From assembly GCA_965240325.2 (NCBI GenBank), contig OZ251236.1, forward strand, positions 806,001-870,000: a stretch of DNA of 64,000 bases. The letters run 5' to 3'. Numbering within the stretch: the first letter of the stretch is position 1; each line of letters starts with the position of its first letter. Below the pieces are notes generated by a model. The model was not told where the DNA came from, did not search any database, and saw nothing but the letters and a program-made list of their open reading frames with translations. This document shows positions 11,392 to 31,482 of this stretch, in pieces. The position numbers were made by a program, and so were the translations under genes. This DNA comes from Rebecca billardiae RCC1528 (taxonomy: Eukaryota > Protista > Haptophyta).

Positions 11392-14300
11392 ATGGACGAC
11401 GAGATGGAGGAGACGAGTGCGCACGAGCAGGGCGAGGGGGAGGTGCTCCTTCTCGTGCTCACGCGCCACGCAACCGAGCCGCCGCGCGCCCAGCCGCTGC
11501 GCGAGTGGCGCATCTCCGCACCCATGATGGTCGGCCAACGGCTCAGCGACCAGCCGGTCGAGCTCGGCGCGCTCGGCGCGCACGTGTGGCGCGCGAGCGC
11601 GCGGGCGTACGTGCCGGAGCAGGACTCGGAGCTCTCGTGGCTCCTGCCCACCCCGCTCGGCCCCGCCGCGCGCGCGTCCATCCCGCTCGCGCGCGTGGGC
11701 GGGCGCTGGCTGGGCGTGCACGTCGAGCCCGATCGTGCCGCGCACACGCTGACGGCCGCGGCGGCGTTCGAGGCGGTGTGCGCCGCGCTGCTGCGGCCCG
11801 AGCCGACGGCGGGCGCCGACGAGATCGTCGCGAGCCTCACCGAGCTCAGCGCCGCGCTCGGCGCCATCCGCTCGCAGCTGCGCGACGAGCCGCTGGCGCT
11901 CGACGACGCGTTGGCCGCGCTCGGCCGCGTGCTCGTGGGCGGTGGCGACGGCGATGGCGGCGACGAAAGCGGCGGTGGCGAGGACGATCGCGGCGACGAC
12001 GTGGCGCTCCTCGCCGTCCGCATCTGCACGCTGCTCGGCGGCGTCGGCGCGCTGTTCGAAGCGTTCCGCCGGCGCCCGCCGCCGCACGGGCCTGGGCTCT
12101 GGGGCGGCGGCGGGCCCGGGGTTGAGCCGGCGCCGATGGTGGCGGCGCTCTGGGCGCTGCCCTGCCGCCGCGCCGCGTGGCAGCGCGCGTGCCTCGGCGG
12201 CGTGCAGACGATTCTCAAGCGCTCGGACTGGCTGAGCGGCCACGCGCACGCGGCGCTCGCGGCGCTGGCGGACGTGGACGCGCGGCCACCGTTCTGCCCG
12301 TGGGCCTCGGCACCGCTCGCTCCGCTGCTCGACGCGCTCGAGCTGCGCTCACCCGAGCAGCCGCTCCCGGACCTCGCGAGGCGGTGGCGCCCGCTGCCGC
12401 GCCCGCGCGGCGCGCCGGCGGTGCTGGCCGCCGAGCGCTCGCGCCTGCTCGGCGGGCGTACCGCCGCCGCCGCCGCGCGGCGCGAGACGCAGCTCACGCT
12501 TGCGCGGCGGCGCGGCCGCGCCGCCGCGCTCGGCGGCGCGGCCGAGGGCGGCGTGGAGCCGGGCTCCGCCGCCGCCGCCGCCGGTGGCGGCGGCGGCGCG
12601 GGCGGTTCGCACGCGCCGAGCTCGCTCGCGGTCGAGCGGGCCGAGGAGTACCGGACTCTGGCGCACCGGATTGACGAGACTTCCGAGCCGGTGCTGCGCG
12701 CGGCGGCCGCCGAGCTGCACGCCGCGCTGGACGCTTCGGCGCGGCTGAGCGACGCCGGCGCGCGCGTCGCGCCGCTGCTCGCCGCGCCGCGCGTCGCGGC
12801 CGCCGAGCCGCGCGGCGACGACCTCGACAGCTGGGCGGCGGTGCGCGCCGCCGCGCGCGCGTTCGACGCCGAGGCGTTCGCCGCGGCCGCGCACGGCGCG
12901 TCACAGGAAGTGCTGGGCTGCACGCAGCAGTTGGAGGGGCTGCGCCAGCCGGGCCCGGGGAGCATCCCGCGGCTGCGCGCGCGCGTCGCCGCGCTCGTGC
13001 GCGCGCGCCGCGCCGTGCTGCCGCGCGCGGCGCGTCTCGTCTTCGACTGCGGCCACCCGCGCGACTGGGCGCTCGCGCCGCGCGCCGCGGCGGCTCTGGA
13101 GGGCGATGGCCGTCCGAGGGCGCGGCGCGCGCTGGCGGGCGTGCGCGCGCTGCCGCAGCCCATCTCGCTGAGCGTGCTCGCCGGGCCGCTGTACGGCTCG
13201 ACCGACGAGGGCGTCAGCGGCTTCGTCGACTCAGCCGACGCACACAAGGCGCGGCTCCGCGCGCCCGCCGCCGCGCTCGAGCTACCGATCGTCCGCGTCG
13301 GCGGCGGCGCGGCTGGCGGCGGCGGCGGGCGCGAGGGCGGCGTCGAGGTGGGCGGCGGCATCCTGGTGATCGACGAGCGCAACTCCGCGCTGCGCTGGCT
13401 GCGCTGCCCCGTGGGCGGCGGCGGCGGCGCGAACGCGCGCGCCGGCGGCGGCGCCGGCCTGCTGACGGCACAGCAAGACACGGAGGTCACCGCCGTGCTG
13501 GCGCGCGGCGCGTGCGCCGTGATCACGGTGGCCGGCCGCGCGGGCGCGGGCCACGCCGACGGGCCGACGCGCACGGCGATGTTCAAGCAGCCGCGCGACG
13601 CGCTGGCGAGCACGCGGCTGCGCCTCGCGCCGCTCGTCGTGCTCGTCGCCGACGCGGGCAACCACTGCGTGCGCGCGCTGCCGTGGGGCGGCGCGGGGCC
13701 GCTCGAGGTGCGCACGGCTCTCGGCACGGCGGGCAAGGCGGGGAGGCCGTCGCTTGAGAAGTCAGGGAAGCGAGAGGGCTCGGCGGTGGAGGGCGCGGCG
13801 CTCAACGAGCCGTCGAGCGTGCTCGAGCTCCCGGGCGGCGACCTGCTCATCGCCGACACCGGCAACAATTGCATCAGGCAGGTGGTGCGGTCCGCGAACG
13901 CCAAGGCGGCCGTCGGCGGGCGCGGCGGCGGCGGCGGCGGCTCGGCGGCCGGACTTTTTGAGTCCGACCGGATCGTGGTGGTCGCAGGCTCGTGTGGCGG
14001 CACGCCGGGCGTGCAGGACGGCGACTCCGAGGCCTCGCTCTGCTTCCGCCCGAGCGGCCTCGCCCTGTGCGCCGACGGCTCGGTCCTCTTCAGCCAGCCG
14101 CGGCTCACAGCGGCGGTGGCGCCCGCGCGCGAGGGCGGCGCGCGCGGCGCGGGCGGCGCGAGCGGCGCGCTGGGCGCGGTGCGCCGGCTTACACCCATCG
14201 ATGACCCTGAGCGCAAGAAGAAGTCCCTCGCGTTCTGGGAGTGCACCACGCTGTACGGCGGCGGCGGGTGCGAGCCCGCCGAGCCGTCGGCGGCGGCTGC

Positions 14301-15673
14301 GGCCGCGGCCGAGTCGGGGCGGCGTGACTCATCCGGCTCAGACGGCGGCGGTGCGGGCGGCGGCGGCGGCGGCAAGCGGCGAGGGGGCGCGCAGCCGGCG
14401 GCGGCGGCGGCGGCGGCGGGCGTCACGCTGCGCCTCGCGCCCGTGCCGAGCGCGCGATCGTTTGAAGCCGAGCACGCGCTGCGGCCGGCCGGCGCGCCGC
14501 CCGCGCACGGGTACTTACTTGCGGAGCCGAGCGGAGTGGTTGAGACCGCGCCCGGCGGACCGCTGCTAATCGTCGACGGTGGGCGGCTCGCGTATCTCCC
14601 GCCGATCTCGCGCGCGCTCGACGCCGCGGCGCGCGGCAAGTCGCTCGGCGTCGACGCCAAGGGCGCGCCCGCGCCGCCGCCGAGCGCGTGCCTGTGCTCC
14701 AGGCTTGCCGCCGAGCAGGGCGCGGCCGCGGAGGGCGGCGGCGGCGGCGCGGCGTCGCAGCTGCTCGTCACCGATCAGTTCGACGCGCTGCGCTTCGCGC
14801 GGCTCAGCACCGGTGGCGGCGGCTTCGCGGGCAACAGCAGCGCCGCCGCCGGCAGCGGAGTCCTGCTCGCCGCCGACCCGTCCGGACATCGGGTCGTGCG
14901 GCTCATGTGCGGCGAGCACGGCGCGGGCGCGGCCACCGACCGCCTGCGCGCGCTCGAGAACGAGGCGGTGCTGTCAGACGACGACGACGAGGAGGAGGAG
15001 GAGGAGGAGGAGGGCGGCGGGGGTCCGGTCGGCTTGGACGGCGCGGGGCACGAGGGCGGCGCGCGCCGCCGCTCGGCGGCGTCGCTCAACGATGCCGCGT
15101 GTGCGGTGCTGGAGGCGAGCGCCGGCGTGGAGCGCGAGCTTGCGCGCGTCGCGGCGCGCTCCGCAGCCGCGGCCGCCGCGGTGCACGCCCTCGCGGTGGA
15201 CGCGCACGCGCGGTGCCACGCGCGCGCGTGCGCGGCGCTTGCGCGCACGGCGCGCGCGCGCGCGCTCGCGCCGAGCGCAGCGGCCGTCGCGCTCACGCTG
15301 ATTCGCAACGCGCCGCACGTGAGCTCGCTGCTGCCGCTGCTCGGCGGCAGCGTCCAGCTCGACGCGAGCCTGCGCGGCGCGGCGCGGCGCGCGCTGATCG
15401 CCGTGCTCGCCGAGTCCGTCTGGGCGCGCGGCGCCGCCGACGCCGACGGCGGCGGTGGCGGCGGCGGCGGCGCGCGCGGCGCAGACGCGGCCACCGCCGA
15501 CGCGGCGGGCGGCGGCGGCGGCGGCTCGGCGCTGCTACCCGCCAGCTCGGGCCTGCTGCACACGCCGGCAGCGCCCGGGCCATCGAAGCCGTCGGAGCAG
15601 CAGTGGGTCGCCGATCTGACGACGCTTCTGTTGAGCGCCCACGCGCACCGCGCGACGGCCGCGGCCACGGCTG

Positions 15674-15736
<63 letters not shown>

Positions 15737-16122
15737 ACGACGAGGGCGGCGGCGGCGGAGGCGAGGGCGGCGGCGGCGCGCCTGCGCTGATTGATGCGAG
15801 CGTTGTGTGCGAGGTGCTGAGCAGCCCGCGCTTCGCCGTCGGCCTGAACGCGCTCAGTCTCTCGCTGCTCGCGCACGGCCTGGCCGCCTGCCTGCCGCCG
15901 CCGGCGCAAGCCGCCGCGGCCGGCGCGGGAGCCGCCGCGGCCGGCGCGGGCGCGGGCGACGGCACGGCCGGCGGCGCCTCGGGCGCGCCGGCCGCGGCGG
16001 CGGATGGTGACGAGGCCGAGGCGATCCCGGTGCGCATCGGCGGCGGCGCGCTGGCCGAGGCCGCCGTCGCGTGGCTCACGCGCCTTGCGCGTGTTTCGCC
16101 CGCGGGCGCGGCGCCGGCGGCC

Positions 16123-16171
<49 letters not shown>

Positions 16172-19100
16172 AGCAGGAAGGAGCGCGCGGCGCGGCGGCG
16201 CTGTCGCCGCTCGCGTGGCTCGCGACGCACGAGCCGGCGTCAGCGTCGGCGTGGCCGAGCGTGCGCGCGCACGCGGCCGCGTGCCTCCCGCCCTCCGCCG
16301 CCGCCGCCGCGCCCTCCGCCGCCGCCCTCCGCCGAGCGTTCGCTTGGCTCGCCGCCGCCACTCTGCGATTGCACGGGCAGTACCGCGGGCGCGCGCGCGC
16401 GCTCACGCTGCTCGGCGAGCTCGTGGGCGTGGCGGAGCGCGTGGAGCGCGCGCACGCGCGCGCGGGCGCCGCGGGCTCGCACGGCGGCGGCGGCGACGAC
16501 GGCGCGGCGGCGGCTTGCCCGGCCCGCGGCGGCGGCGCCGAGCACGACTGGCGCAGCGCGTGCGCGCGCGAGCTGGCCGCTGTCGCGCACGCCGCCGCGG
16601 ACAAGCTGAGCCCCGCGGCGGTGGTCGCGGCCGTGCTGCCTCAGCTCGGCGCGGAGGGCGGCGCGCTCTCGGCCGCGCAGCCCGCCGAGCGCGCGCGCGG
16701 CGTGCGCCTCGCCCTCGGCGTGCTCGCGAGCGCCGCGGCGCGCGCGCGCTCGCAGGCGCTCGCACTGCCCGGCGAGGGACCGCCGCCGCCCGCCGCGGCG
16801 GCGGGCGGCGAGCGCTCGCTCGCGCTTCGGCACGTGCTCGCGGAGCCGACGCTGTGGCTGCGGCTGCTCACGTGGCACCGCGCGGCGGCGCACGCCCTCG
16901 ACGCCGACGGCGCCGCGCGCCTCTGCGCCGCCGCGGACCGCTCCGCGCTCGGCGCGCTCACGGCCGAGGTCGCCCATGCGCTTCTCTCGGCCGCGCGCGC
17001 GCCGCGCGCGCGCACGCTCGGTGAGCTGGAGAGCGCGCGGCGCTGCGCGGGGCAGCTGCTCTCGGCGTGGTCGGAGTGCGGCGTGCGCGTCTCGGCGTCG
17101 GAGCTCGACGGCGCGTTCGACGCGCTCGACGAGCTCTCGGTCCGAAAGCGCATGGCGCTCGACGTGCTGCTGCTCCGCTGCGCGGACGCGACGCCCACGC
17201 GCTGGCTTCTTGCCGCCGAGAGCCGGTGGGCCGATCTGACGCTGGACGAGGCGGAGTGGATGCTGCGCGCGCACACGCGCGACGAGGGCGGCGTGGAGCT
17301 GCGCGACGAACCGGCGGGCGCGCTCGGCGCGCACGCCGCGCCGCCGCCGCCGCCGCCGCCGCGCACGCGGCTCGCGCTGGTCGCCACCGCGGCGGCCGGT
17401 GCCGGCGACGACGACGACGGCGGCGAGGGCGTCGGCGGCGGCGGCGGCAGCGGCGGCGCGCGGCCTATGGTGCTGCACCGCCTGCCGCGCGCGCTCTCCG
17501 CCGCGCTTGAGTGGCTGCACGCGCTGCAGGGCAGCGCGCTCTTCGACGCTCTCTGGGCGCACGCGGCGGCCTCTGAGATGGGCGCGACGCCAGCCGGGCG
17601 CGGTGCGTCGGGCGCGGGCGCGCGCGCCTCCGACGAGGCGGCGGCGATGGGCCTGGGCGACGCGCTGTGGGCCGCCGTCGACGTGTCGTCGTCAGACGCG
17701 GAGGAGGCGGGCGCGCGCGCGTGCGTGGCCGCGCTGTGCGCCGCGCGCGCCGCCTACGCCGCCGTCTTCTCCGCGCTCGACAGCGGCACAGCCGAGTACG
17801 CGCAGCTGTGCGTGTGGGCGCCACCTCTGCTCGCGTCGCCTGACGAGGTGCGGTTGCTCTCTGCGTGCGCCGCGCCCATCGCCGCCGCCGACGCCGACGC
17901 GCGCGCCGCGCCGGGGAATCAGACCGCGCGGGCAGCAGAGCATCAGACCTACGACGACGAGGAGGACTGGCTCACCGCCGACGTCGACGGCGCGTGGGTG
18001 GAGCGCTTGCTCCGCGCGCTGGACGATTTTGCGCTCGTGCGCAGCGTGCGCGAGGCCGCGCCGCGCGCGCTGCGCACGCTCTCGCTCGCGCAGCGGCTGG
18101 TCGCGCCCGGCGCGCTCGCCGCCTGCCAGCAGGCGGCGGCGGCGCTCGGCGCGCTGCTCGCCGCGATCGACGGCGGCGCGGCGCGGCGCGGCGGTGGCGG
18201 CGGCGGCGACGCGCCGCCCGCGCTCACACTTGCGCACGTCGCGCCCCTCGCCGAGCGCGCGCGCCTCGACATCGACCGGCGGCTTCTGCTGCTGCACGAC
18301 GGGCTGATCGGCGCTTTGCTCGCGCACGAGCGCACCCTCGAGTTCCTCAGGCACCGGCTCGTCACCGACACCGACTTCAGCTCAGCGGTCGAGATGGCCA
18401 TCGGCTCGACCGAGATGCGCTGCCCGGCCGAGCTGTGGAGCCGTGCGCAGGGGTGCGTGGACGAGCGCCCGCTCTCGACGCTCGCGTCGGTGCGCTCGTA
18501 CCTGCACGCGCACATCTACCGGCCCGCACCGCTGTACCCGACGCTCGGCGCGCTGCTCGACGCCGTCGGGGGCTGGGACTGGGGCCGCGCGCCGGACGTG
18601 GCGGCAGAGTTGGCGGCGGTGGATGAGTTACACGATGCGCTCGTAGAGCTGCTGGAGGGCGACGCGGACGACGCAGCGCCCAACAGGCTGGTGCAGCTCG
18701 CGCGGCCCGCGAGGCAGGCGGCGTGGCTCTGCGCCTCCGAGCCGCCCGCCGGCGCGGCCACCGGCGGCGGCGGCGGCGGCGCCGACGCCGGCGCGGACGC
18801 GGAGGGCGGCGGCGCCGACGCCTCGGCGCCGGCGCACGGCGCGAGCTCGCCGCCGCCTTCGCTGTGGCTGACGCATCGCGTCGAGCGCGATGGCTCGTGC
18901 GCGTACCTCCCGGCCGCCGAGGTGCACGACTTCCGAGCCTCGATCCTGCTCGCGCGCGTCGCCGGTCGCGGCGAGGACGTGCAGCAGCTCGTCGACGCCT
19001 TCGTCACTGAGCTCGCCAGCATGGCCGCCCTCGCGCGCTGCCTCGCGCGCACGCGCGCGCAGGGCCACTTTGGGCTGGCAAGCTATGAGGTGCGCGTGCC

Positions 19101-22100
19101 GTTCGGCACGCCCGCGGCGGAGATGGCGGCGCTGCTGCGCGCCGCGCGCGAGCGCGAGCGCGCGTGGGCCGACGCCGTGCGCACGTGCCGCGAGACTTGC
19201 TATTTTGCGAACGCGGCGCCGGCGCGCGCGCTGTGGCCGCTGCTGCGCGCGCTGCGCGCGAGCGAGCGCGCGGCGCGCGAGGGCGGCGAGGCGCGCGCGC
19301 GCGCCGCGACCGCCGGTCTCGCGGCCGCGCTCGCGCCGTGGCTCGACCTCGCCGGCGCGCGCGCCGACGACGCGGCCGTCGACGCGGCCGACGACGCGGC
19401 CGATGGCCTGGCGCTCGCGAGCGCGCGCCGGCTGCTGGCGGGCTGGGAGGAGGCGCGCGGCGGTGCGCGGTGCGCGCGTGTCGGCTCGGACGAGGACGCT
19501 CGCGACGCGCTGCGCAGCCTCGCGCACGCGCTCGACGAGGCGCTGTGCCCGCTGCCCGCCGTCGAGCGCGCGCTGCCGCCCGCGGGCTCCGCCGCGCCGG
19601 CCGCCGCCGCGTCAGCCGCGCTCGGCGGCGGAGGCGCCGCGTCGGCGTCGGCGGCGGCGCGCGGCGCGGACGTGGACGATGCCGGCCTCGCGCTCGGCTC
19701 AGGCGAGGTCGGAGTTGTCGTCGCGGACGGCGAGAGCACGGTCGCGCAGCACGTGCTGTCGCTGTACGCGCGCGCGCGCGCCGCGCCCGAGTCGCTCGAG
19801 TGCCTGTGGTGCGCGCGTGGCATGGCGGACGACGAGCTCCCCCGCTTGCTCGCGCGGTGGCGGGGCGCGGCGCGCGCCGGCCGCGCGCACCGCCTCCACT
19901 GCGTCGCGGCGGCTGACGCTCTGTCCGCAGAGGCACAGCGTCTGCTTGTGCGTGAGCTTCAGCTCGCGCTCGCGTCGGGGCGCGCGGTGCTGGCGCAGGG
20001 CGGCGGCGGCGGCGCGCGGCGCGGCGCGGGCGCGGGCGCGTCCTCCGCGCCGCCGCCGCCGCTTGATTCGTCATGGGGGGCATCAGCATGGCTGCCGCCG
20101 CTCGCCATCGTGTGCGGGGGCTCCGAGCGGAACATTCTGATCTCGCATCTGGGACACTCGCGGGTGCCGACGCGGCCGCTCCCGCCGCCCGCGCTGCACG
20201 CCGCGGCCGCGCACATCGGCGCGGGCGTGCTCCTCACCTCCGCCATCGCCGGCGCGGGCAAGACCTTCGCCGCGCGCGCGCTCGCCGCCGAGCGCGGCCT
20301 GACGTACGCGCACGCGCCCATCCACGGGGAGGACTTGCGCGCGCTCGGCGCGCGCGTGGCGCGCGCGCGGCGCGGCGGGCGCGGCGGCGGCACGCTGCTG
20401 CACCTCGATGTGGCGGACGTGCCGTCGGCGGCGCGCGCGCTCGACCAGGCGCTGTTCAGGCTGCTGCTGCTGCGCGTCGCGCCCACCACCGCGCCACCGG
20501 CGGCGGCGGAGGACGCCGAGCCCGCCGGCCACGGCGCCGAGGCGTCCGCGGCGCGCGGCCGCGGCGGCGGCGGCGGCGGCGCGGCGGACGCCGCCGTGCC
20601 GCCGGCCGCGCCGGGCGCGGACGGCGCGGAGCGCGAGTGGATCAGCGCGCGCGCCGCCGCGGAGGGTGCGCGGCTGCTGCCCGCGTCGCTGCCGGCGCGC
20701 GCCATGCAGTTTGTGCTCGAGATCCCGAGCGGCCGGCTGCGCTCGCGCTGGACCGTCGGAGAGCTGCTGCCGACGCGCCGGCTGCGCGCGGACGAGGGCT
20801 CGCTGCGCGTGACGCGCGCCGCGCTCCGCGCCGGCCTGCTCTCGGACGCCGCGGCCGCGGAGGCGCACGCCTCGCTGCAGCTCGCGTGTCGCGCCCTCGA
20901 CGTGCTCGACCGCCATGGCGGGCTCTTCCCCCACCGCTTCCCGACGGCGGCGCCCGGCGGTGGCGGCGGCGCGGGTGGCGCAGAGCTCGGCGGCGGCGGC
21001 GCGCCAAGCGGCGGCGGCCACGGCGGCGGCGGTGTCGCCGCGGGCAAGCGGCCGGCCGCCGCGAGCGCCGGCGCCGGCGCCGGCGCCGAGCCCGGCGGCA
21101 CGCCGCCGCTCGTCACGCTGTGCGACGCGCCGCGCATCGAGTGCGCCGCGGCCGACCTCCCCGCGGCGCGCTGCCACTCGCTGCTGCGCGCCGCGCTGCG
21201 CGCGCCCGCGCGCGCGCCGCTCAGCCTGTGGTCGGCCTGGGGCTTCGTGCGCGTGTTCGCGTGGCAGCTGCGCGAGCTGCACGCCCCGGACTCGGCGATC
21301 AACCAGTCGATGCTCCCGGACTCAGGCGCCGCGCAGGAGCACGACGCGTTCGTCAAGTGCGCGATGAAAGGCGAGCTGATTCGCTTCCTGGAGCGCACGG
21401 CTCGCGAGTTTGCGACGCGCGCCGCGGTGCCGGCGGGCTCGGGCGAGCTCGTCGCGCTGCGGGCGAGCGGCTTCGGCGAGATCGACTACGGGACGTCGGT
21501 CCGGTACAACGGGCGGTGGGAGCGGTGCCCGTTCGACAACGAGGGGCGGCCGTGCTTCCGCAAGGCGCAGGACGGTCTCTTCTGCTACTACCGCTCGCTC
21601 GCGCGCGCGTGGGTCATTCACACCGAGGTGGTGCCGTCCGGACTCGTCCTGTGCTCCGCGCCCGGGGAGTCGTTCCAGAACGGCTGGCTCACCGCGCCCG
21701 GCTGGGAGGTGGACGCGCTGGTCGTGGTCGCGCGCGCGCGGCACGCGGGCGGGCACGAGGCCGAGGCGGTGCGCGTGTCGGGCGTGGGCAGCGCGCGCGG
21801 GCGTCGCTCGATCGGCCCGCAGGAGATGGGCGTGTACCTTCGGCAGCCGCCATACGACGACGTGAACGGCCGCGAGCACTTCGTGAAGGGCGCGCGGGAC
21901 GCGGGCGGCGGCGGGCTCACGCTCGTCCGGCCGGGCGGCGAGGGCGGCGCGGCGGACGGCGCGCCGGCCGACGGCTCGCGCCGGCACCTCTTCTGGTCGC
22001 GCGCCGAGTCGCGCTGGGTGCTCGCGGCTGTGTGCAACGAGTCTCAAGGCGCGTTCGCTGTCTCGGAGGGCAGCGCGCTCGAGGGCCCGTGGTGCTCGAT

Positions 22101-22260
22101 GCCGCCCACCGTGAAGGAGAACGGCCGGTTCGTCGGCGTGCACGCCGACGCGGCGGAGGGCGGCGGCACGGGCGGCGCGGAGGCCGACGCCCTCGACGAC
22201 GAGCCCGAGCGCGGCGGCGGCGCGGACGGCGGCGGCGGGGACGGAGGCGGCATCGGCAAC

Positions 22261-22291
<31 letters not shown>

Positions 22292-24396
22292 GCGGGCTCG
22301 ACGCCGACGGTGGTGCGGACGGCGGCGGCCTCCGGCTGCTGCCCTGGGCCGCATCGAACCACGAGTGCGTGATCTTCTCGTCCGACTGCGCCGACGTCGC
22401 CTTCCTCTCGCTCGACGGCCGGCGGATGGAGCGTGACATGCATCCGCACCTGCGAGCGCACCTCGGCGCGAACGGCGTGCGCGTGGGCGACGGGCTGGGC
22501 GAGATCAACTCGAGATATCGCGAGGTGCTCGGCACGCTGACGGGCGTCTCGCGCTCCGCGAAGGAGGCGAAGGGCCTGCTGGGCGGCGCGTACTGCATCA
22601 CGGGCGACGCGCTCCTCAAGATGCTCGCCGTCTTCGTGCGCGCGCAGTGTTCGCTCCCTGTCGTGCTGTGCGGCGAGTGCGGCTGCGGCAAAACATTCCT
22701 GCTCACATTTTTGTGCGCGTGGCTCGGCGCGCCGCTGCTCGTGCTCGACGTGCACGGCGGGACGACCGTCGACGACATCCTCGGGATCTTCGGCCGCGCG
22801 CAGCGGCTGCTCGACGGCGACGGCGGCGGTGGCACGCCGCAGGGCTCGGCGCCGGCGGCGGCGGCGGGGGCGGCAGCGCCGGCGGACAGCGCCGCGGCCG
22901 CGGCCGCGCCGCCCGCCGCGCCGCCCGCCGCGTCTGCCGAGCGCGCGCCGCCGCCGCCGCCGCGGCGTGTGTTCGTCTTCTTGGACGAGCTCAACGCGTC
23001 GCCGCTCGTGAGCCTGCTCGCCGAGGCGGTCTCCTCGCGCTCGCTCTTCGGCGCGCCGATCCCGCCGGGCGTACAGCTCCTCGCTGCGATTAACCCGTAC
23101 AGGCTGCGCCCGCCGTCGATGCGCGACGAGGCCGGGCTTGCCTTCAACTTGCACGGCGGCGCGGCCGGCGGCGCGGCGGGCGGCGGCGGCGGCGGCGCGG
23201 CGGTCGACCCGATGTCGGCGCTGGTGTACCGCGTGCACCCGATCCCTCCGACCCTCGAGCAGTTCGTCTTCGACTTCGGCTCTCTGGGCGAGGGCGAGGA
23301 GAACGAATATGTGAAAGCCATCGTGACGCGCGCGCTGCTGCCGCTGCACCGGGCAGCGCGAGCGGCGGCGGCCGCGGCGGCGGGCGGTGGCGCGGAGGAG
23401 GCGAAGGGCGGCGCGGGGCTCGAGCTGAGCTCGACCGACGCGCACTGCGTCGCCGCCCTCCTCCTCGCCTCGCAGCGCCACGTGCGCGCGGTCGAGGCCG
23501 ACTCCTCCGCGGTCTCCCTTCGCGACGTGCAGCGCGCGTGCGCGCTGCTCTGTTGGTTCAGCTCCAAGCTCGTGCCGCGCGCGGCGGCGGGCGGCGGCGG
23601 CGGCGGCGCGGGGGGCGCGGCGCGGCCGGTCTCCCAGCTCGCGGTGGCGACGGTGCTCGCCCTCGCCTTCACGTACTGCTACCGGCTGCCGCGCCGCGCC
23701 GAGCGCGAGCGCTACTGGGGCGCGATGCGCGAGGCGCTTCGCCGCCAGTCGCGCGGCGTCGAGAAGGGGCGGGGCTGGCTCAGCTCGGGGTTCGCGCGGC
23801 TCGTGGCGGAGGGCGCGCTCGAGCGCGTGCTCGGCGCGACGCAGCGCCGGCTCGTCTCGCACCTGTCCCTCGAGCCCGACGTCGCGCTCAACGAGGCGCT
23901 GGCGGAGAACGTATTCGTGACGATTGTTTGCGTGCTCAACCAGCTGCCACTGTTCATTGTCGGCAAGCCTGGCTCGTCCAAGACGCTCGCGATGCAGGTG
24001 GTGACCTCCAACCTGCAGGGCGCGCAGTCGCCCTCGCCCTTCTTCCGCACGTTCCCCGCCGTCCACGTCTTCGCGTACCAGTGCTCGCCGCTCTCCACCG
24101 GCGACGCGATCCGCCGCCAGTTTGAGATGGCGTGTCGGTTCCAAGCACACCAGCAGTCGGGCGGCGCGGCGACCGCGCTGCTGCTGGATGAGGTTGGGCT
24201 TGCGGAGCACTCGCCGGACATGCCGCTCAAGGTGCTGCACTCGATCCTGGTGAAGCCCGCCGTCGCGGTGATCGGGCTGAGCAACTGGGCCCTCGACCCC
24301 GCCAAGATGAACCGCTCGATCTGCCTGCGCCGCACCGAGCCGACGCCGAGCGATCTCGAGCTCACGACAGCCAGCATCCTTGCCGGCGCCGCGCTC

Positions 24397-24433
<37 letters not shown>

Positions 24434-26352
24434 GCGCGGCGGCGCCGCCGGCGGTGCCGCCGGGCGCGGCGCGCGTGCCCTCGGGCGCGCCGCCGCCGGG
24501 CGCGCCGCTCGCCGCGCGCCGCGCCTCCTCCGGCCTGCGCCGGCTGCTGCCGTGGCTGCGCCCGCTCTCGCAAGCCTACCACCAGGTGTACTCGTCGCAG
24601 GCGCGGCTCGCGGCGGGCGGCCGCGACTGGCTCGGCTCTCGCGACTACTTCTCGCTGGTGAAGCTGCTCCGGGCGGAGCTGCAGCGGCGGTCGGAGCGGC
24701 AGCTCACGCCCGCGCTGCTCGCGTACGCGCTCTGCCGCAACTTTGGCGGCCAGCCCGCGCTGACGGCGCACGTGCTCGAGACTTTCGCCGCGCGCTGCTT
24801 TGCGCACGAGGCGGGGCGCGCGTGGTCGCGCGGCGGCGGCGCCGCCGCGCCGGCCGAGCTCGGCGGCGGCGGTGGCGGCGGCGCGGCGAGCGCGCTCGGG
24901 CTCGCGCCGCCGCCCGTCCTCGCCCTTGTCGCCGCCAACCTCCACGCCGAGTCCCTCGCCACGCGCCACCTGATGCTGTGCACGCGCAACGCGGCCGCCG
25001 TTGGGCTGCTCCGCGCCGCCGGGCTGCTGGACGACGCTTCCGCGGAGGTTCTCTTTGCGTCCGCGTTCGCCGAGGACCTCTCCGAGCTGCACATGGTGCG
25101 GCAGATCAACGCGGTGAAGACGGCGATGGCGCGCGGGCGCACCGTCGTGCTCGTCAACCACGACAACCTGTACGAGGCGCTGTACGACGTGCTCAACCAG
25201 CGGTACGTAGTCAAAGGGTCGCAGCGGTTGCTTCGGATTGCGATCGGCGCGCGCTCGCAGCTGTGCGCGGTGAGCGCCGGCTTCAAGCTGGTCGTGGTGG
25301 TGGAGGAGGAGCACGCGCTCTCGAGGCTCGACCCGCCGCTCCTCAACCGCTTCGAGAAGCAGCTGCTCACCCCCGCCGACCTGCTCACGCCCGCGCAGCG
25401 CGAGCTGGCCGAGTCGCTTGACGGCTGGGTCGAGGCGGTCGTGCGGCGCGCGGGCGTCGGCTCGGCGCAGGGAGCCTTCTGTGGCTTCCACTCGGGCACG
25501 GTGCCGTCCGCGGTGCTGTACGCGTGCGCACGCGCGCAGGGGGCGGTCGGCGGTGCGCGCGGCGTGGCGGGCGCCGGGGCCGCGCCCGGCGCGGCCGGCG
25601 CGCCCACCGCCGCCGTGGAGGAGGAGGCTGGCGCCGACGGCGCCGACGGCGCCGACGGCAGCGTGCCGGCCGTGGGCACGGCGGCGCGCGCGGCGCTCGA
25701 AGCTGAGCTGCGTGCGCTGCTCGCGCGCACGATGCTGCCCGTCGCCGCGCGCGCCGCGGCGCCCGACGACCCGGCGGACGCCGCGGCGTTCGCCGCGTGC
25801 TACTACGCACGTCACGCCGACATCTGCGCCGCCCTCGAGGCGTACGACCCGCCGCCTCCGACGACGCCGACGCCGACGCCAGAGGCAGAGGCGGCGGAGG
25901 CGGCGACGGCGGCGGCGGCGGCGACGGCGGCGGCGGCGGCGGCGGACCAGGCGGCGGACCAGACGGACCAGGCGCCTTCGTCCGCGCGCGGTGTGAGCGA
26001 CGCCGTGGGCGAGGGCGGGAGCGCGCCGCACTCGCTCGCTGCCGCGTTCGCCCGGCCCACCGCCGGCGACGAGCGCGCTCGCGAGCACGCGCGCTCGGCG
26101 CCCGGCGGCGGCGCCGCCGCCGTGGACGGCAGCGCCGGCGGTCGGCTGCTACTGCTGCTGACGCGCTCGCCCGCGTCGCATCTCTCCGCGCACGCGGTGC
26201 AAGCGGGCGCGCTCGGCCGGCGCACGCGCGCGCAGCTGCTGCCCCTCAGCGCCGTCCCGTCAGAGGAGGCCCTCGGGGAGGCGCTGCGAGAGTTCTACCG
26301 GAGGGGCCTGCCTCCTGCCGCCGACCAGCCTGCTGGGCGCGGCGCTCCGGAA

Positions 26353-26387
<35 letters not shown>

Positions 26388-28873
26388 GGCGCAGGGATCC
26401 GGACCGGGCCCTACCGGACCGGGCCCTCATCACCCGGCCGCGGAGGATGCGGCCGCGGCGGGCGCGCGCGCGGCGGAGCGCGGCGCTGCGGCCGCCGGCG
26501 CTGCAGCCGCCGCCACAGCCGACGCCGACTCACAGGCCACGCCAGGGCCCGCGCGACCGGCGGCGGGTGAGGCGGCGGCTGACGCCGCCGACGCCGCCGA
26601 CGCGCGTCCGCTGCTGCTGCTGCAGGCTGACCCGGTGTCTGGGCGCGCGATGCAGCTGCTGCCGCTGGCGATGCACGCCATCCAGCGGGAGCGCGCGCTG
26701 GCGCTCGGCGCGGCGGCAGACGGCGCGGCTGCGACTGCCGCGAGCGCCGCCATCGCCACTGCCGCCGCCGCCGCCGCGCCTGCCGCCGAGACAGCGGAGC
26801 CTGCGGCAGCGGCCGCGTCGGTGCAACCGGACGGCGGTGGCGGCTCCGCGGCCCCCGCGGACGCGCCAGCTCGCGCAAACGCTGACCGTGCGCGCACCGC
26901 CGCCGCCGCCGCACCGCACGCACCCGCCCAGCCGCTGCCAACCGTCGTCCTCCTCGTGCACCTCCCGCCAGGGCACCGCGGCTCGCAGCGCGCGTTCTCA
27001 CTCGACCTCGTGCGGCCCTGGGTGGCGGTCGCCGTCGACGACGTCCGGCCGGACGCGCCGGACTGCGGTCCGGGCGGTGTGGGCCGGCTGGACGCGCTCG
27101 CGGCCGACGCGGAGGGCGACCCGATCGGCAGGCTGGGCACGGCGACGCTGCTCGCCGGCTCGCCGCTCGCCCTGGTCGACTCGCTCGGCGCGGGCGCGCT
27201 GCTTGCGGTCGTGCGCGCCCGGCTACCCTCCGTGATGGCGCTCGCCCTCCCGCCGCTGGTGGCGGAGGCGGAGGGCGGCGCGCCGATGGCGGCTGCAGCC
27301 GAGGACGGCCGCGCGGGCGAGCACGACTCCGAGCCGCCGCCCCGCTCCGCCGTCGCGGGGCGCATCGCGCGCGTGCGCTCGCTGCTCGAGACTCGGCCGC
27401 AGCTCGCCGCCCTCGTCGCAAAGGGTGTGCGCACAGCGCTTGGCGCGTGCGAGCGCGGCGGCGCGCCCGGCGGCGGCGGCGAGGGCGCGCACGCGCACGT
27501 CGCGCTCGCGCTTGGCCAGCGCTTCGGCGGCTCGCTGCGCGAGGGCATGCGCGCCGCGCTGCGCGAGCTCGTCGTGCGCTCCGCCGCGGCGGTGCTGCGC
27601 GCGCTCGACGCCGACTGCGCGCTCGAGCTGCTCCGGGCGTCGGAGCGCGGCGGCGCGCGCGAAGCGCTTTGGTTCGAGATGGCCTCTCGGCTGCTCTTTG
27701 CGCAGCCGGACGGCTCGTCGGCGGCGGGCGCGCTCGCGCTCGCGCTCGCCGCCGCGCCGGGCGCGCGCGACGGCGGCGACGCGCACTGCCCGAGCCACGG
27801 CCTCCACGGCGTGCTCCGCGCGCGCTTCCCGTTTTCGCACCGGCTGCGCGCGCGGCTCGAGAGTCCGGACGTCGCCGCAGAGTTTCGTCGGCTGCTGCGC
27901 GCCGTTGGCCGCGGCGAGGAGGACGGCGGCGGCGTGGGCGACGCCGCCGCCGCCGCCGAGGCCGCGTCGGAGGAGGACGACGACGGAGCCGAGGCGGAGG
28001 CCAGCGAGCGCGCCGCCGGCGGCGGCGCGGCCGTGCCGGCCGCGCGCGCGTCGGCGCGTCTCTCGGTGAGCGAGGCGCTCGCCCGAGCGGCGGCCATCGG
28101 GCGGGAGGTGTACGGCGCCGGGCTGGATGAGCCCGGCGCGGAGGGCGGCGTGCACGGCGCGGGGGAAGCGCCCTCCGCCGCCGACGAGGCGGTCGAGCCC
28201 GCCGCGATGCTCGCCGCCTCCGCCTCCGCCGTGCCGCCGATTTCGGTCGGGTCCACGATCGCCTACGTGCACGATGCGGTCGCGCTCAGCGCGCCAGCGC
28301 TGCCGGCGCTCAGCCTGTCGAGCCAGCTGCGGCTGCACACGGCGGTGCTCCGCGCCGCGGCGCCCGGCGGCGCGGCGCTGCGCTCGCCCGCCACCGCGCA
28401 CGCCGCTCTCCTCCTGCACGCCTCGCGCACGCACCACGCCGCCGCGGCGCTGTCGGCTGCACTCTCGCGAGCGCCCGCACCGGTCGCGGCCTCCATCGCG
28501 GCGAGCGTCTTCGACGCGATCGACGGCGCGGCGGCGGGCGGGCGGGGCGTGCGCGCGGTCGACGCGGCGGTGGCCTCCTGCGTCGCGCGGGCCTTCTGCG
28601 ACGGCCTCGAGGCCGCCGTCGGCGCGGTCGGCTCGACGCGCGAGCTCGCGCCCTGGCTTGGCGCGTGGGCGAGCGCATGCTCAGCAGTTGAGCTGGACAC
28701 GTCCGCCCTGCTCGCGCACGCGCACGAGGGGGCGGGCGCGGCGGCGGGCGGCGTGCTTCCCGCCGCCGCCGCCGCCTCGCGCGACTGGGCGCGCGCGCTC
28801 GCGCTGCGCTGCTTTGTCCTGCGCGTGCTCCTCCCGACGCTCGAGAGCTCGCGCCGCGCCGAGCGCGGCGACG

Positions 28874-28916
<43 letters not shown>

Positions 28917-31426
28917 AGTTGTTGGCCAAGGCGCCTCCAGCGCGGCAGCCGGTGGCGGCGTCGTCGGTGGCGCGGCGGATGGCCCGTCCGCCTCGCTCGT
29001 GCTCGGCGTGTGCGCGGCGTGCGCCACCGCCGCCGCGGCGGCCGGGAGCCTGGAGTCGATCAGCGCGCTCATCCGGGCGGCGAGTGCGATGCGGCCTCAG
29101 CCACCGACACTGGTGGGGGACCTGATGGTGGCGCACGCGTCGGAGCAGCTGCTCGGGCGCACGGCGGTGCACGCGGGAAGCGCGGGCGCCGCGCCGCCCG
29201 AGCCCGCGCTGCTCGACGCGCTTGTCGCCCTCGTCAGCCCGCGCCGCGCGGCGGGCGCCGAGCGCGGCGCCGCGGGCGCGTCCGCCGGCGCGGCGCGGCT
29301 GCCGCTGTCGCCTGAGCACCTCGATGTGTGCGCGCGCCGCCGGCTGCTGCTGGCGCTCGTGCACGCCGCGTCGGACGCAGAGGGCGCGCGCGCGCGCGCG
29401 GTCGGCGCCGCGCTGCGCCGGCTGCCCGCGCACGGCGACGTCGCCGCCGTCGAGGCGGTGAATCTCGCCGAGGCGAGATTGGCGCACGCGGCGGAAGTTT
29501 CCGCGAACGCGCCGCGCGGCGCGGCGGGCGCGGCGCCGCCTCGCTCGCTGCTCGGCGCGGACGCGGCGGAGGGCGAGGAGGGCGGCGGCGCGCGTGCTGC
29601 GAGGCCGGCGCTCTCTCTCTCCGCCGCGCTCGCCTCGCACGGCGGGCTGCGCTGGTCGCTCGAGCAGCTCGAGGCGGTCGCGCGCGCCAAGGCGTGCGTG
29701 CGCGCGTACACGGCAGACCTACTTTCGCATCTGCAGGGGCGCACGCCCGCGGCGGCGCGCGCCGCGGCCGAGGCGGCGGCGGGTGGCGCCGACGGCGGGG
29801 GCGGCGGCGGCGGCGGCGGCGCGGAGGGCGGCGGTGGGAGCGCCGGCGGCGCGGGCGCCCTGCTCCGCGCGCACGCCGACGCGGCGACCGCGCTCCGCCT
29901 CTCGCGCGGCGCGGCGCAACTCGCGCTGCAGCTGCTGCTTCGCGACGGTGGCGTGGACGCGCTTGTGGCCCTGCTGGGCGAGGCGGAGCGGGACGTGCCG
30001 TGGCTGCCGTTCCGGCGGGAGGGCCTCGCGGCGGTGTCGGCGCACGGCGCGGCGCAGCCCACGCTCGACGCGCTCGCCCTGCTCGCGCGCACCTCGCAGC
30101 TGTACGCGCGCGTGTGCGCGTGGGCCGAGCGCGCGCGCACGGCCAACGCGTGGCTCGGCGCAGAGGGCGAGATCGCGGCGCGCGAGGCGATGCTCGCCGA
30201 CGCGGCGCTGCGGCCGTGCGCGGCGGACGTGGCGGGAATGCTCACGCTCACCGCGGCGATGGCGCGCGCGACCGACCCGGTGCTCGCCGCGCCGTGGCGC
30301 GCCAAGCCCCCGGGCTCCGAGTCCGCGCACCGTCGGAAGGTGCGCCGACTCTTCTGCGCGGCGCTGTGCTCAGGGCTGTCCGACACGGCGGTGCGCCAGG
30401 CCGCGCTGGCGATCGGCGCGGTCGGGCTCGACGCGGCGGCGTTCAGCGCGCACAAGGAGGGCAGCGCGCCCAGCGCCGCGCGCCGCCGCGCGCTCGTGCG
30501 CCAGCTCGGCCTCAGCCTCGCGCTGCGCACCGCCGCGGGCTCGACCGGCGGCTGGCTGCACGCGTGTCTGCTCGACCCTGCGTCGCAGGCGGTGTCGCAC
30601 ATGCCCACGTGCGATGGCGGCATCCCGCTCGAGCGGCTGATGGCGACGCTGGGGTACGCCGGGTGGTATCGCTGCCCGAATGGACATCTTTACTCTGTCG
30701 GCGAGTGCACCATGCCGATGGAGGTCGCCAAGTGCCCCAAGTGCGGCGCCGTGATCGGCGGCCGATCGCACACGGCCGTCGCCGGCGTCGTGAGGCTCGG
30801 CACGACTGACGAAATCCTCGAGGAGGCGAAGCGCGGCAACATGGAGAAGCTGGCGAGCGTGCTGCGCGCGGTCGGGCTGGCGGGTGGCGGCGGCGGCGGC
30901 TCGGTCCGCTTCCCGCGGCGCACGACCAGCTGCCCGATCGGCTTCGACCGCGCCTCCTTCGACGCGTCGGACGGCGAGACGATTGTGGACGTGCTGCCGC
31001 GCGCCGACCGCACGACGTGCTCTGTGCTTCGCGTCTTCATGTTCGCGACGTTCGCCGCGCGGCTGGCGATCAACGAGGCGCTGGCCGACGCGGAGGGCGA
31101 GCTGGCGGAGCAGGGCGCGGGCGGGGGCGAGCCCGAGCAGGGGTCGGGCGCGCCCGCCGCCGCGGACGACGACGGTGGCGGCCTGCAGAGCGGCCGAGGC
31201 GGCGGCGCGGGAGGCGGCGGCGGCGCGCGCAGCCGCGGCCGCGGCCGCGGCGCCGGCCACAGCGGCGCGGGCGGCGGCGGCGGCCGCTCGACCGGCGGCG
31301 GCGGCGGCGGCAGCGCCGACGCCGGCTCGGCCGCGCGCGCCGCCCCCGCCGCGGTCGCGGTGCTCAACGAGGGCGGCCTGCGCGCGCTGCGGCGCGACAA
31401 GGCCCTCCTCCGATTACTCGAGGGCA

Positions 31427-31482
<56 letters not shown>

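What the first reader, a model, noticed from the sequence alone, without database searches (positions are those of the whole stretch)
13150..14910. NHL beta-propeller at the N-terminus of the RNF213-like protein
Seen: NHL-type units VLVADAGNHCVRAL, ALNEPSSVLELPGGDLLIADTGNNCIRQV, G.QDG....FRPSGLALCADGSVLFS, LAEPSGVV...LLIVD, LLAADPSGHRVVRL. Knowledge: animal RNF213 has no NHL repeats; NHL propellers bind RNA or protein ligands in TRIM-NHL E3s. Inference: a swapped-in recognition module that could give different target specificity.
Basis: partly seen in the sequence, partly recalled or inferred. Interest (0 to 1): 0.7.

Follow-up and report, generated by a model that had tools for sequence, protein, structure and literature searches.

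The report
NHL propeller on RNF213-like giant
A 7,400-residue algal relative of the human immune ubiquitin ligase RNF213 does carry a six-bladed NHL propeller near its start, but RNF213-like proteins from at least six other protist lineages have the same layout, so it marks an old subfamily that I could not find described in any paper, not a local domain swap.

Summary
Window 13162-14910 (+) encodes aa 640-1222 of one uninterrupted 7401-codon reading frame (11245-33450, probable ATG at 11392). This stretch is a six-bladed NHL beta-propeller with many low-complexity loop inserts. Blades 1-4 are solid: Pfam NHL scores above its cut-off, a profile built only from orthologues gives E 4e-33, and AF2 pLDDT exceeds 90. 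Blades 5-6 are eroded and weakly supported. The model matches solved NHL propellers best: SOQ1 Z 29.6, NHLRC2 Z 29.0, TRIM-NHL about Z 23.

The rest of the protein is a true RNF213 homologue (E 7e-99 to human and mouse RNF213, two Walker-A AAA modules, an RZ finger) but has no RING.

Animal RNF213 does lack NHL. But the layout NHL, AAA core, RZ is not a local swap. Fourteen other giant RNF213-like proteins have it in the same order: Prymnesium, Cymbomonas, two dinoflagellates, Salpingoeca rosetta, Rigifila, Entosiphon, Sulcionema and metagenomic proteins. All fall in one well-supported clade, separate from animal RNF213.

The propeller sits in the N-terminal arm, where human RNF213 carries its CBM20 module. 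A targeting role is therefore plausible but untested. I found no paper describing this subfamily.

The parts
11392..33450 (+). Single-exon gene for the RNF213-like giant protein. The mechanical ORF runs from 11245; the first ATG is at 11392; about 7350 aa.
   Evidence: One open frame of 7401 codons with no stop. GC3 is 0.79-1.00 in this frame in every 300-nt block from 11545 to the stop. The first Met is aa 50, at 11392.
13162..14910 (+). Six-bladed NHL beta-propeller, aa 640-1222, with low-complexity loop inserts.
   Evidence: Pfam NHL above its cut-off. Orthologue-only profile E 4e-33. AF2 pTM 0.71. VIA Z 29.6 to SOQ1 and 29.0 to NHLRC2 over about 300 residues.
13162..13404 (+). Blade 1 (aa 640-720). 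It holds a Gly-rich insert.
   Evidence: Aligns with blade 1 of the orthologues. Covered by the orthologue profile hit at aa 657-951. AF2 strands lie at model residues 41-121, with block-mean pLDDT mostly 57-96.
13513..13686 (+). Blade 2 (aa 757-814), a canonical NHL unit.
   Evidence: Repeat HMM domain 62.9 bits. Most of the 3333 library hits cover this unit. pLDDT about 90 or higher.
13705..13887 (+). Blade 3 (aa 821-881), a canonical NHL unit and the site of the Pfam hit.
   Evidence: Pfam NHL at aa 862-879. Repeat HMM 80.4 bits. pLDDT about 90 or higher.
13969..14196 (+). Blade 4 (aa 909-984), with an insert before its last strand.
   Evidence: Repeat HMM independent E-value (iE) 3.5e-4 to 1.1e-3, in register. 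Within the orthologue profile hit. pLDDT 86-95 on the strands.
14236..14595 (+). Blade 5 (aa 998-1117), interrupted by a low-complexity insert of about 80 residues. Weakly supported.
   Evidence: Placed only by the alignment with orthologues. Marginal repeat-HMM hit at aa 1085-1113, iE 0.045. pLDDT is mostly below 50, apart from short strands at model residues 508-518.
14692..14910 (+). Blade 6 (aa 1150-1222). Its last two strands close the ring.
   Evidence: Orthologue profile hit in register at aa 1199-1222, iE 0.01. Block-mean pLDDT is 93 for model residues 611-620, which lie within the two closing strands at 606-623. The structural alignments run to model residue 621-631.
14923..14976 (+). 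Helix directly after the propeller (aa 1227-1244), also present in the orthologues.
   Evidence: AF2 helix at model residues 628-645. Aligned columns 935-960 of A1.
18337..19113 (+). Conserved block with no Pfam name (aa 2365-2623), shared by the whole clade. It serves as an anchor for the common domain order.
   Evidence: BLASTP hits with E 1e-9 to 1e-21 to every clade member examined, always between the NHL region and the AAA core.
22336..25518 (+). RNF213-type AAA core (aa 3698-4758), with Walker A motifs at 22672-22695 and 23962-23985.
   Evidence: phmmer E 7e-99 to human and mouse RNF213 structures. Pfam AAA_22, AAA_5 and AAA. 38-44% identity to the clade members in the table. Motif positions.
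30646..30792 (+). RZ-type zinc finger (aa 6468-6516).
   Evidence: Pfam PF20173, E 1.7e-20, 72.9 bits against a cut-off of 27. It is the only RZ finger found in the genome.
31975..33405 (+). Conserved C-terminal region (aa 6911-7387).
   Evidence: BLASTP E 1e-16 to 1e-48 to clade members, in the same order.

Best explanation
Shown: window 13162-14910 encodes a six-bladed NHL beta-propeller. It is part of the same polypeptide as an RNF213-type AAA core and an RZ zinc finger. The gene belongs to a subfamily of RNF213-like giants found across eukaryotes, in which an NHL propeller sits in the N-terminal arm and there is no RING.

Inferred: the C-terminal two thirds work as in RNF213. That means an ATP-driven dynein-like ring coupled to an E3 module whose RZ finger takes part in ubiquitin transfer. 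The propeller, about 1100 residues upstream of the subfamily's first conserved block (about 2500 upstream of the AAA core), is the module that docks the machine onto its target. The target could be a protein, an RNA, or the surface of a microbe or an organelle. The propeller would thus play the part proposed for the CBM20 domain in the N-terminal arm of human RNF213.

The propeller was inherited with the subfamily, not acquired in this alga. In this very GC-rich genome its loops and last two blades have filled with low-complexity inserts.
For: One protein:
- A single stop-free frame with uniform third-position GC bias.
- Complete transcriptome-derived ORFs of relatives (Rigifila, Entosiphon, Sulcionema) hold NHL, AAA and RZ in one transcript.

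Propeller:
- Pfam NHL above its cut-off, and 3333 NHL proteins hit in the library.
- Orthologue-only profile: 101 bits, against 2.8 bits at most for shuffles.
- Six blades in the same order as the orthologues.
- AF2 pTM 0.71, with blades 1-4 at pLDDT above 90.
- Z 29.6 to SOQ1, 29.0 to NHLRC2 and 28.0 to a teneurin-like protein, each over about 300 residues.

RNF213 kinship:
- E 7e-99 to the solved RNF213 structures, RZ finger E 1.7e-20, two Walker A motifs.

Subfamily:
- 14 further NHL-bearing RNF213-like proteins with the same domain order.
- All 15 NHL-bearing rows lie in one 43-row clade with SH-like support 99. None of the 78 rows outside has NHL, and 0 of 500 label shuffles cluster as tightly.
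- NHL is the only Pfam domain found in the N-terminal arms of five orthologues.

Recognition role by analogy:
- Human RNF213 has a positively selected CBM20 domain in its N-terminal arm, which the authors propose as a receptor domain (PMC11549300).
- Other RNF213-like clades carry other accessory modules (CBM20, PH, UBA, U-box) by precomputed Pfam.
Against: - No ligand, expression or activity data exist.
- Blades 5-6 are poorly supported: pLDDT is mostly below 50 and there is no significant sequence signal of their own. The ring may be imperfect.
- The AF2 alignment contained 52 canonical NHL propellers, which biases the model towards that fold.
- In human RNF213, point mutations in CBM20 did not change recruitment to pathogens (PMC11549300). 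So even the analogue's receptor role is unproven.
- 28 clade members show no NHL, so the module can be lost, or those gene models are incomplete.
- The tree is a FastTree with a midpoint root and uneven sequence composition. 'Ancestral to the clade' is therefore the parsimonious reading, not a proven one.
Confidence: 0.6

Rival explanations
1. The propeller is real, but it is a structural, self-assembly or autoregulatory part of the N-terminal arm and does not choose the target. It might, for example, dock onto the AAA ring or mediate oligomers or coat formation.
For: In human RNF213, coat formation depends on ATPase and RZ activity, and no N-terminal ligand-binding residue has been shown to matter (PMC11549300). 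The best structural matches, SOQ1 and NHLRC2, are not substrate adaptors of E3 ligases. The residues conserved among orthologues are mainly fold-determining Gly, Asp, Asn and Arg of the repeat itself.
Against: NHL propellers with known function (TRIM71/LIN-41, TRIM2, teneurins; listed) use their faces to bind ligands. The N-terminal arms of RNF213-like clades swap between typical binding modules such as CBM20, PH and UBA, as expected of adaptors.
Confidence: 0.2
2. The propeller is a decaying relic in this alga. It was inherited from the subfamily ancestor but no longer works, as low-complexity expansions erode it.
For: About half of the span is low-complexity insert. Blades 5-6 have no significant repeat signal and low pLDDT. 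Many clade members lack NHL altogether.
Against: The frame is intact over 1.75 kb with coding-type GC3 of 0.87-0.98. Blades 1-4 keep the repeat signature at 94-101 bits. The closing strands of blade 6 are confidently placed. The inserts fall in loops between strands when aligned to the orthologues. The same low-complexity load, 45%, affects the whole protein, including regions that are clearly conserved.
Confidence: 0.12
3. One reading: the NHL module was swapped into an RNF213 backbone in this lineage, replacing the animal-type N-terminus.
For: The animal RNF213 proteins among the hits have no NHL. The closest proteins to the NHL region in the library are multi-NHL proteins that share nothing else with this gene.
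Against: Fourteen proteins from six or more distant eukaryotic lineages have the same order of parts. A profile of their propellers recognises this one in register. All sit in a single clade separate from animal RNF213.
Confidence: 0.05
4. Two genes are read as one: a separate NHL protein upstream of the AAA-RZ gene, with an internal promoter or an unrecognised intron and stop.
For: None found beyond the general caution that stop codons are rare at 80% G+C.
Against: There is no stop in 7401 codons. There is no dip to the 62-72% G+C seen in most blocks outside the giant ORFs. GC3 stays at 0.87 or higher from the NHL region to the AAA core. Transcript-derived orthologues contain both parts.
Confidence: 0.03

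Closest known systems
Animal RNF213 (mysterin; human and mouse structures 8S24, 7OIK, 6TAX)
   Same: A giant single chain with a homologous dynein-like AAA core (E 7e-99), two Walker-A-bearing modules, an RZ finger, and a long N-terminal arm that carries an accessory domain.
   Different: It has no RING and no CBM20. It has an NHL propeller instead, is about 2200 residues longer, and is 45% low complexity. It falls in a different clade of the AAA-core tree from the cnidarian and echinoderm RNF213 proteins and Capsaspora.
Unnamed NHL-bearing RNF213-like proteins: Prymnesium parvum AB1Y20_005488, Salpingoeca rosetta PTSG_02206, Cymbomonas tetramitiformis CYMTET_34083, and transcripts of Rigifila, Entosiphon and Sulcionema
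   Same: The same order of parts: NHL propeller, conserved block, AAA core, RZ finger, C-terminal region. None of the four tested (P0151, P0153, P0164, P0181) has a RING by the motif search. They share one clade, with the Prymnesium protein as sister at support 95. The propellers align blade by blade.
   Different: This copy has the longest inserts and the most eroded blades 5-6. The S. rosetta, Rigifila and Entosiphon propellers show six clean repeats. Identity in the propeller is only 21-30%. These relatives exist only as database entries called 'hypothetical' or 'RZ-type domain-containing'. I found no paper on them.
Long-repeat NHL propellers: SOQ1 lumenal domain (7DJJ-7DJM), NHLRC2 (6G7W, 6GC1), teneurin and teneurin-like NHL (9IFO, 6VHH)
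   Same: These are the best structural matches (Z 28-30, rmsd 3.0-3.3 A, about 300 residues). They are also the best sequence matches in the PDB (SOQ1 E 0.006). The repeat period is about 55 residues, as in the library hits. Pfam TEN_NHL hits 5 of the 15 aligned propellers.
   Different: Those propellers are joined to thioredoxin-like domains or to extracellular teneurin scaffolds, not to an AAA or E3 machine. Sequence identity is 17-25%.
TRIM-NHL E3 ligases (TRIM71/LIN-41, TRIM2, TRIM3, Drosophila Thin)
   Same: A ubiquitin-ligase-type protein that carries a six-bladed NHL propeller. The fold matches at Z 22-24.
   Different: In TRIM-NHL proteins the propeller is C-terminal, behind a RING, B-box and coiled coil. 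Here it is N-terminal, there is no RING or B-box, and the catalytic part is an AAA core with an RZ finger. The resemblance is convergent design, not family membership.

Membership tests
NHL-repeat beta-propeller (Pfam PF01436) | Sequence match to the NHL repeat model above the curated cut-off | tested here: met
   26.4 bits (N-terminal 1600 aa) and 33.5 bits (aa 600-1245) against a cut-off of 20. 14 of the 15 aligned propellers match.
NHL-repeat beta-propeller (Pfam PF01436) | Six consecutive repeats that close into a six-bladed propeller | tested here: met
   Six blades align in order with the orthologues. The AF2 model aligns over its whole span (model residues 37-631) to six-bladed NHL structures at Z 28-30. 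The orthologue profile covers blades 1-4 and the end of blade 6.
NHL-repeat beta-propeller (Pfam PF01436) | Every blade individually recognisable and confidently modelled | tested here: inconclusive
   Blades 1-4 have pLDDT mostly above 85. Blade 5 and the first half of blade 6 have pLDDT below 50 and only marginal repeat-HMM hits (iE 0.045).
RNF213 family (giant AAA E3 ligases) | Homologous dynein-like AAA core with Walker A motifs in two modules | tested here: met
   phmmer E 7e-99 to human and mouse RNF213, four matched stretches. Pfam AAA_22, AAA_5 and AAA. P-loop motifs at aa 3810-3817 and 4240-4247.
RNF213 family (giant AAA E3 ligases) | RZ-type zinc finger downstream of the AAA core | tested here: met
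   PF20173, E 1.7e-20, 72.9 bits against a cut-off of 27, at aa 6468-6516.
RNF213 family (giant AAA E3 ligases) | RING finger in the E3 module, which gives animal RNF213 its name | tested here: not met
   No RING-type Pfam hit at E<=0.1. No C3HC4-type motif by pattern search, although the same pattern finds the RING in the Nematostella, Amphiura and Pinguiococcus homologues.
RNF213 family (giant AAA E3 ligases) | CBM20 module in the N-terminal arm, as in human RNF213 aa 378-515 (PMC11549300) | tested here: not met
   No CBM_20 hit in the N-terminal 3600 aa. NHL is the only named domain there.
RNF213 family (giant AAA E3 ligases) | ATP-dependent ubiquitin ligase activity | not testable with these tools
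   Requires biochemistry.
NHL-bearing RNF213-like subfamily (unnamed) | Order of parts: NHL propeller, conserved block, AAA core, RZ finger, C-terminal region | tested here: met
   BLASTP segments fall in the same order in P0151, P0153, P0164, P0169 and P0181. In the other nine NHL-bearing proteins the NHL units lie N-terminal of the same conserved block. P0151 and P0193 gave no RZ match. NHL units lie 900-1600 residues upstream of the conserved block in all.
NHL-bearing RNF213-like subfamily (unnamed) | Placement of the AAA core in the clade that holds all NHL-bearing members | tested here: met
   FastTree of 121 cores. A 43-row clade with support 99 holds all 15 NHL-bearing rows. This protein is sister to the Prymnesium parvum protein at support 95.
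TRIM-NHL E3 ligases | N-terminal RING, B-box and coiled coil, with the NHL propeller at the C-terminus | tested here: not met
   No RING or B-box hit. The propeller is N-terminal, at aa 640-1222 of 7401.

The most novel reading that the evidence does not exclude
The layout NHL, AAA core, RZ finger defines an ancient RNF213 sister family, possibly dating to the last eukaryotic common ancestor (LECA). In protists it would serve as a cell-autonomous surveillance ligase. The NHL propeller would be its pattern-recognition module, for example for viral or foreign RNA or for the surface of an invader. It would be the counterpart of the CBM20 domain of human RNF213, and would show that RNF213-type immune machines diversified by exchanging N-terminal receptor modules long before animals arose.
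Probability: 0.2. Interest if true: 0.75.

Novelty: new variant of a known kind. Interest (0 to 1): 0.5.

Why it matters
RNF213 is studied almost only in vertebrates, as the moyamoya disease gene and as a ligase that coats bacteria, parasite vacuoles and lipid droplets. How it picks its targets is still open, and its N-terminal arm with CBM20 is the current suspect (PMC11549300). This gene and its 14 relatives show a widespread RNF213-like lineage in protists. It has no RING, keeps the AAA core (and, in all but two relatives, a detected RZ finger), and carries a different, well-understood binding fold in the N-terminal arm. That offers a natural comparison for testing whether the arm is the receptor. 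It also offers a tractable organism, since Salpingoeca rosetta has the clean six-blade version. For this window itself the result is modest: a correct domain call on a member of a subfamily that is visible in databases but that I could not find described in any paper.

Tried and rejected
- Word-index homologue search with the NHL region (aa 620-1230) and with aa 3790-4690 of the whole protein: both timed out, probably because of low-complexity words. A low-complexity-free stretch, aa 4143-4377, worked.
- AF2 on the single sequence gave pLDDT 32 and was unusable.
- I looked for the architecture among the 150 best NHL hits of the exhaustive search. None shares any other part of the giant protein. 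Multi-propeller proteins outrank the true orthologues because their many repeats add up. So that search alone would have wrongly suggested that the architecture is unique.
- PDB sequence search with the NHL region gave only marginal hits: SOQ1 at E 0.006 and TRIM2 at E 0.4.
- Seven motifs of the strand type made a seven-bladed reading possible. I rejected it because the motif at aa 1172-1187 aligns with the first half of blade 6 in the orthologues and the model matches six-bladed structures.
- Literature searches for RNF213 together with NHL, NHL repeat, protists, choanoflagellates, algae and similar terms found nothing relevant; 'NHL' there mostly means non-Hodgkin lymphoma.
- No introns had to be modelled, and nothing here looked human, viral or toxin-related.
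Full report
THE GENE. The window is very GC-rich (62-81%). It belongs to a 72-Mb, 41-contig eukaryotic assembly. A single open frame of 7401 codons runs from 11245 to 33450 on the + strand. Stop codons are rare at 80% G+C, so I checked codon-position composition. In every 300-nt block from 11545 to the stop, third-position G+C is 0.79-1.00. It is the highest of the three codon positions in all but two low-complexity blocks. No stretch inside the frame drops to the 62-72% G+C seen in most blocks outside the giant ORFs. The gene is therefore one uninterrupted exon. By a simple entropy mask, 45% of the protein is low complexity.

RNF213 KINSHIP. Pfam finds AAA_22, AAA_5 and AAA around aa 3805 and an RZ-type zinc finger at aa 6468-6516 (E 1.7e-20). 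It is the only RZ finger in the genome. The C-terminal 3801 residues match the solved human and mouse RNF213 chains at E 7e-99 over four stretches. Two P-loop motifs lie at aa 3810-3817 and 4240-4247. There is no RING: no Pfam hit and no C3HC4-type pattern. The same pattern does find the RING in the Nematostella, Amphiura and Pinguiococcus homologues. 'RNF213-like' is therefore right for the AAA core and the RZ finger, but the name-giving RING is missing.

THE OBSERVATION. Pfam NHL hits aa 862-879 above its cut-off. An exhaustive phmmer search of aa 630-1225 against 1.84 billion representatives gave 3333 hits at E<=1e-3, the best at 2e-38. Almost all of that signal lies on aa 750-905, which is blades 2 and 3. 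A repeat HMM built from those hits also finds blade 4 in register (independent E-value, iE, 3.5e-4 to 1e-3) and gives marginal hits on blades 1 and 5. The 150 best hits are multi-propeller proteins that share nothing else with this gene.

RELATIVES WITH THE SAME ARCHITECTURE. Two homologue searches timed out on low-complexity words. A search with the clean stretch aa 4143-4377 then returned 465 giant relatives. By precomputed Pfam, ten of the best 120 carry NHL, and my repeat HMM finds NHL units in 14. They are:
- Prymnesium parvum AB1Y20_005488
- Cymbomonas tetramitiformis
- Polarella glacialis
- Durusdinium trenchii
- Salpingoeca rosetta PTSG_02206
- transcriptome ORFs of Rigifila ramosa, Entosiphon sulcatum and Sulcionema specki
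- six metagenomic proteins

BLASTP shows the same order of parts: NHL, a conserved unnamed block (aa 2365-2623 here), the AAA core, the RZ finger, and the C-terminal region. The block-to-C-terminus order was read in all 14; the NHL segment itself aligned by BLASTP in five (P0151, P0153, P0164, P0169, P0181) and is placed by the repeat HMM in the rest. Two of the 14, P0151 and P0193, gave no RZ match. The S. rosetta, Rigifila and Entosiphon proteins show six clean consecutive units. NHL is the only Pfam domain in the N-terminal arms of five orthologues. The three transcriptome ORFs are called complete and hold NHL, AAA and RZ together. That is direct evidence from relatives against separate transcription.

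SIX BLADES. A MAFFT alignment of aa 600-1245 with the 14 orthologous regions runs blade by blade in the same order (A1). It also shows that the extra strand-like motif at aa 1172-1187 belongs to the first half of blade 6, so the count is six, not seven. A profile built from the 14 orthologues alone scores this region at 101 bits (E 4e-33). One domain covers aa 657-951, in register over blades 1-4, and a weak in-register hit covers aa 1199-1222. 200 shuffles reach 2.8 bits at most.

STRUCTURE. AF2 without an alignment failed (pLDDT 32). With a 67-row alignment (14 orthologues and 52 six-unit segments of library hits, A2) it gave pTM 0.71 and mean pLDDT 66. 195 residues have pLDDT of 90 or more. 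Blades 1-4 and the two closing strands are confident. Most of blades 5-6 and all the inserts fall below 50. Every top Foldseek hit is an NHL propeller. VIA-align gives:
- Z 29.6 to SOQ1 (rmsd 3.3 A, 300 residues)
- Z 29.0 to NHLRC2
- Z 28.0 to a teneurin-like protein
- Z 22-24 to the TRIM-NHL domains (Thin, LIN-41/TRIM71, TRIM2, TRIM3)

In each case the alignment spans model residues about 37-630, which is the whole ring. One caveat: the alignment fed to AF2 contained canonical NHL propellers, so the model leans towards that fold. The independent support for a full ring is the matching blade order with the orthologues.

HISTORY. I built a FastTree of the AAA cores of 121 proteins. All 15 NHL-bearing rows fall in one 43-row clade (SH-like support 99), and this protein is sister to the Prymnesium protein (support 95). 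None of the 78 rows outside has NHL. Those include the cnidarian and echinoderm RNF213 proteins, which group with Capsaspora. In 500 shuffles the label never clusters as tightly. Within the clade, NHL occurs in most early branches. The NHL-less members mostly have the conserved block only 660-830 residues from their start, against 1320-2290 in NHL-bearing ones. That points to a shorter arm, or to consistently incomplete gene models, and not to random truncation. The parsimonious reading is that the propeller is ancestral to this subfamily and was not swapped in here. The root and the method limit how firmly that can be said.

FUNCTION (INFERRED). In human RNF213 the N-terminal arm carries a CBM20 domain under strong positive selection. 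Its discoverers propose it as a receptor domain, although point mutants had no effect (PMC11549300). By precomputed Pfam, other RNF213-like clades carry CBM20, PH, UBA or U-box modules. The NHL propeller occupies the corresponding region in this subfamily. The best-supported mechanism is therefore that it docks an ATP-driven, RZ-dependent ligase onto its target. The ligand class is unknown. Because the nearest folds are of the SOQ1, NHLRC2 and teneurin type and not TRIM-NHL, RNA binding should not be assumed.

OTHER OBSERVATIONS. The same genome has a second, more distant RNF213-like ORF of 4370 codons (G000:C17:1796522-1809631) with no NHL and no RZ hit. It may be this paralogue, but I did not check the finger.

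LITERATURE. Five full-text searches found no description of NHL-bearing RNF213 relatives or of RNF213 in protists. The relatives exist only as 'hypothetical' or 'RZ-type domain-containing' database entries.

VERDICT. This is a new variant of a known kind, shared with a subfamily found across eukaryotes that I could not find described in print. It is of moderate interest.

Noticed in passing
window 25519-30645 (aa 4759-6467): The stretch between the AAA core and the RZ finger, where animal RNF213 has its RING, has no RING by Pfam or by pattern search and is 38-76% low complexity. The four NHL-clade members tested (P0151, P0153, P0164, P0181) also lack a RING. The Pinguiococcus, Nematostella and Amphiura homologues have one.
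   Followed up: partly
window 18337-19113 (aa 2365-2623): A conserved block with no Pfam name, shared by every clade member examined (E 1e-9 to 1e-21). It always lies between the NHL region and the AAA core. Its fold and role are unknown.
   Followed up: no
G000:C17:1796522-1809631 (+); loci L001-L003: A second RNF213-like open frame of 4370 codons in the same genome. It is about 30% identical in the AAA core and has no NHL units and no RZ hit.
   Followed up: partly
G000:C1:765243-765922 (-) and G000:C1:1871213-1871695 (+): Two other NHL-repeat genes in the genome. The first has four canonical repeats in a small ORF. The second, in an open frame of 988 codons, is 41% identical to blade 2 of this propeller over 79 residues.
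   Followed up: no
P0223: A 5630-aa RNF213-like protein with an RZ finger is labelled 'ATP-binding protein [bacterium]' in NCBI. In the tree it nests among eukaryotic sequences, so it is probably a mis-binned eukaryotic contig.
   Followed up: no
one search hit list; By precomputed Pfam, RNF213-like clades differ in their accessory modules: CBM20, PH, UBA, U-box, EF-hand, WWE. In the NHL-less part of the NHL clade the conserved block sits at a strikingly constant 660-830 residues from the protein start.
   Followed up: partly
window 11245-33450: 45% of the protein is low complexity (runs of Gly, Ala, Pro, Asp and Glu). Even conserved domains such as the AAA modules are split by such inserts. 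This defeated word-index searches until I chose a clean stretch.
   Followed up: yes
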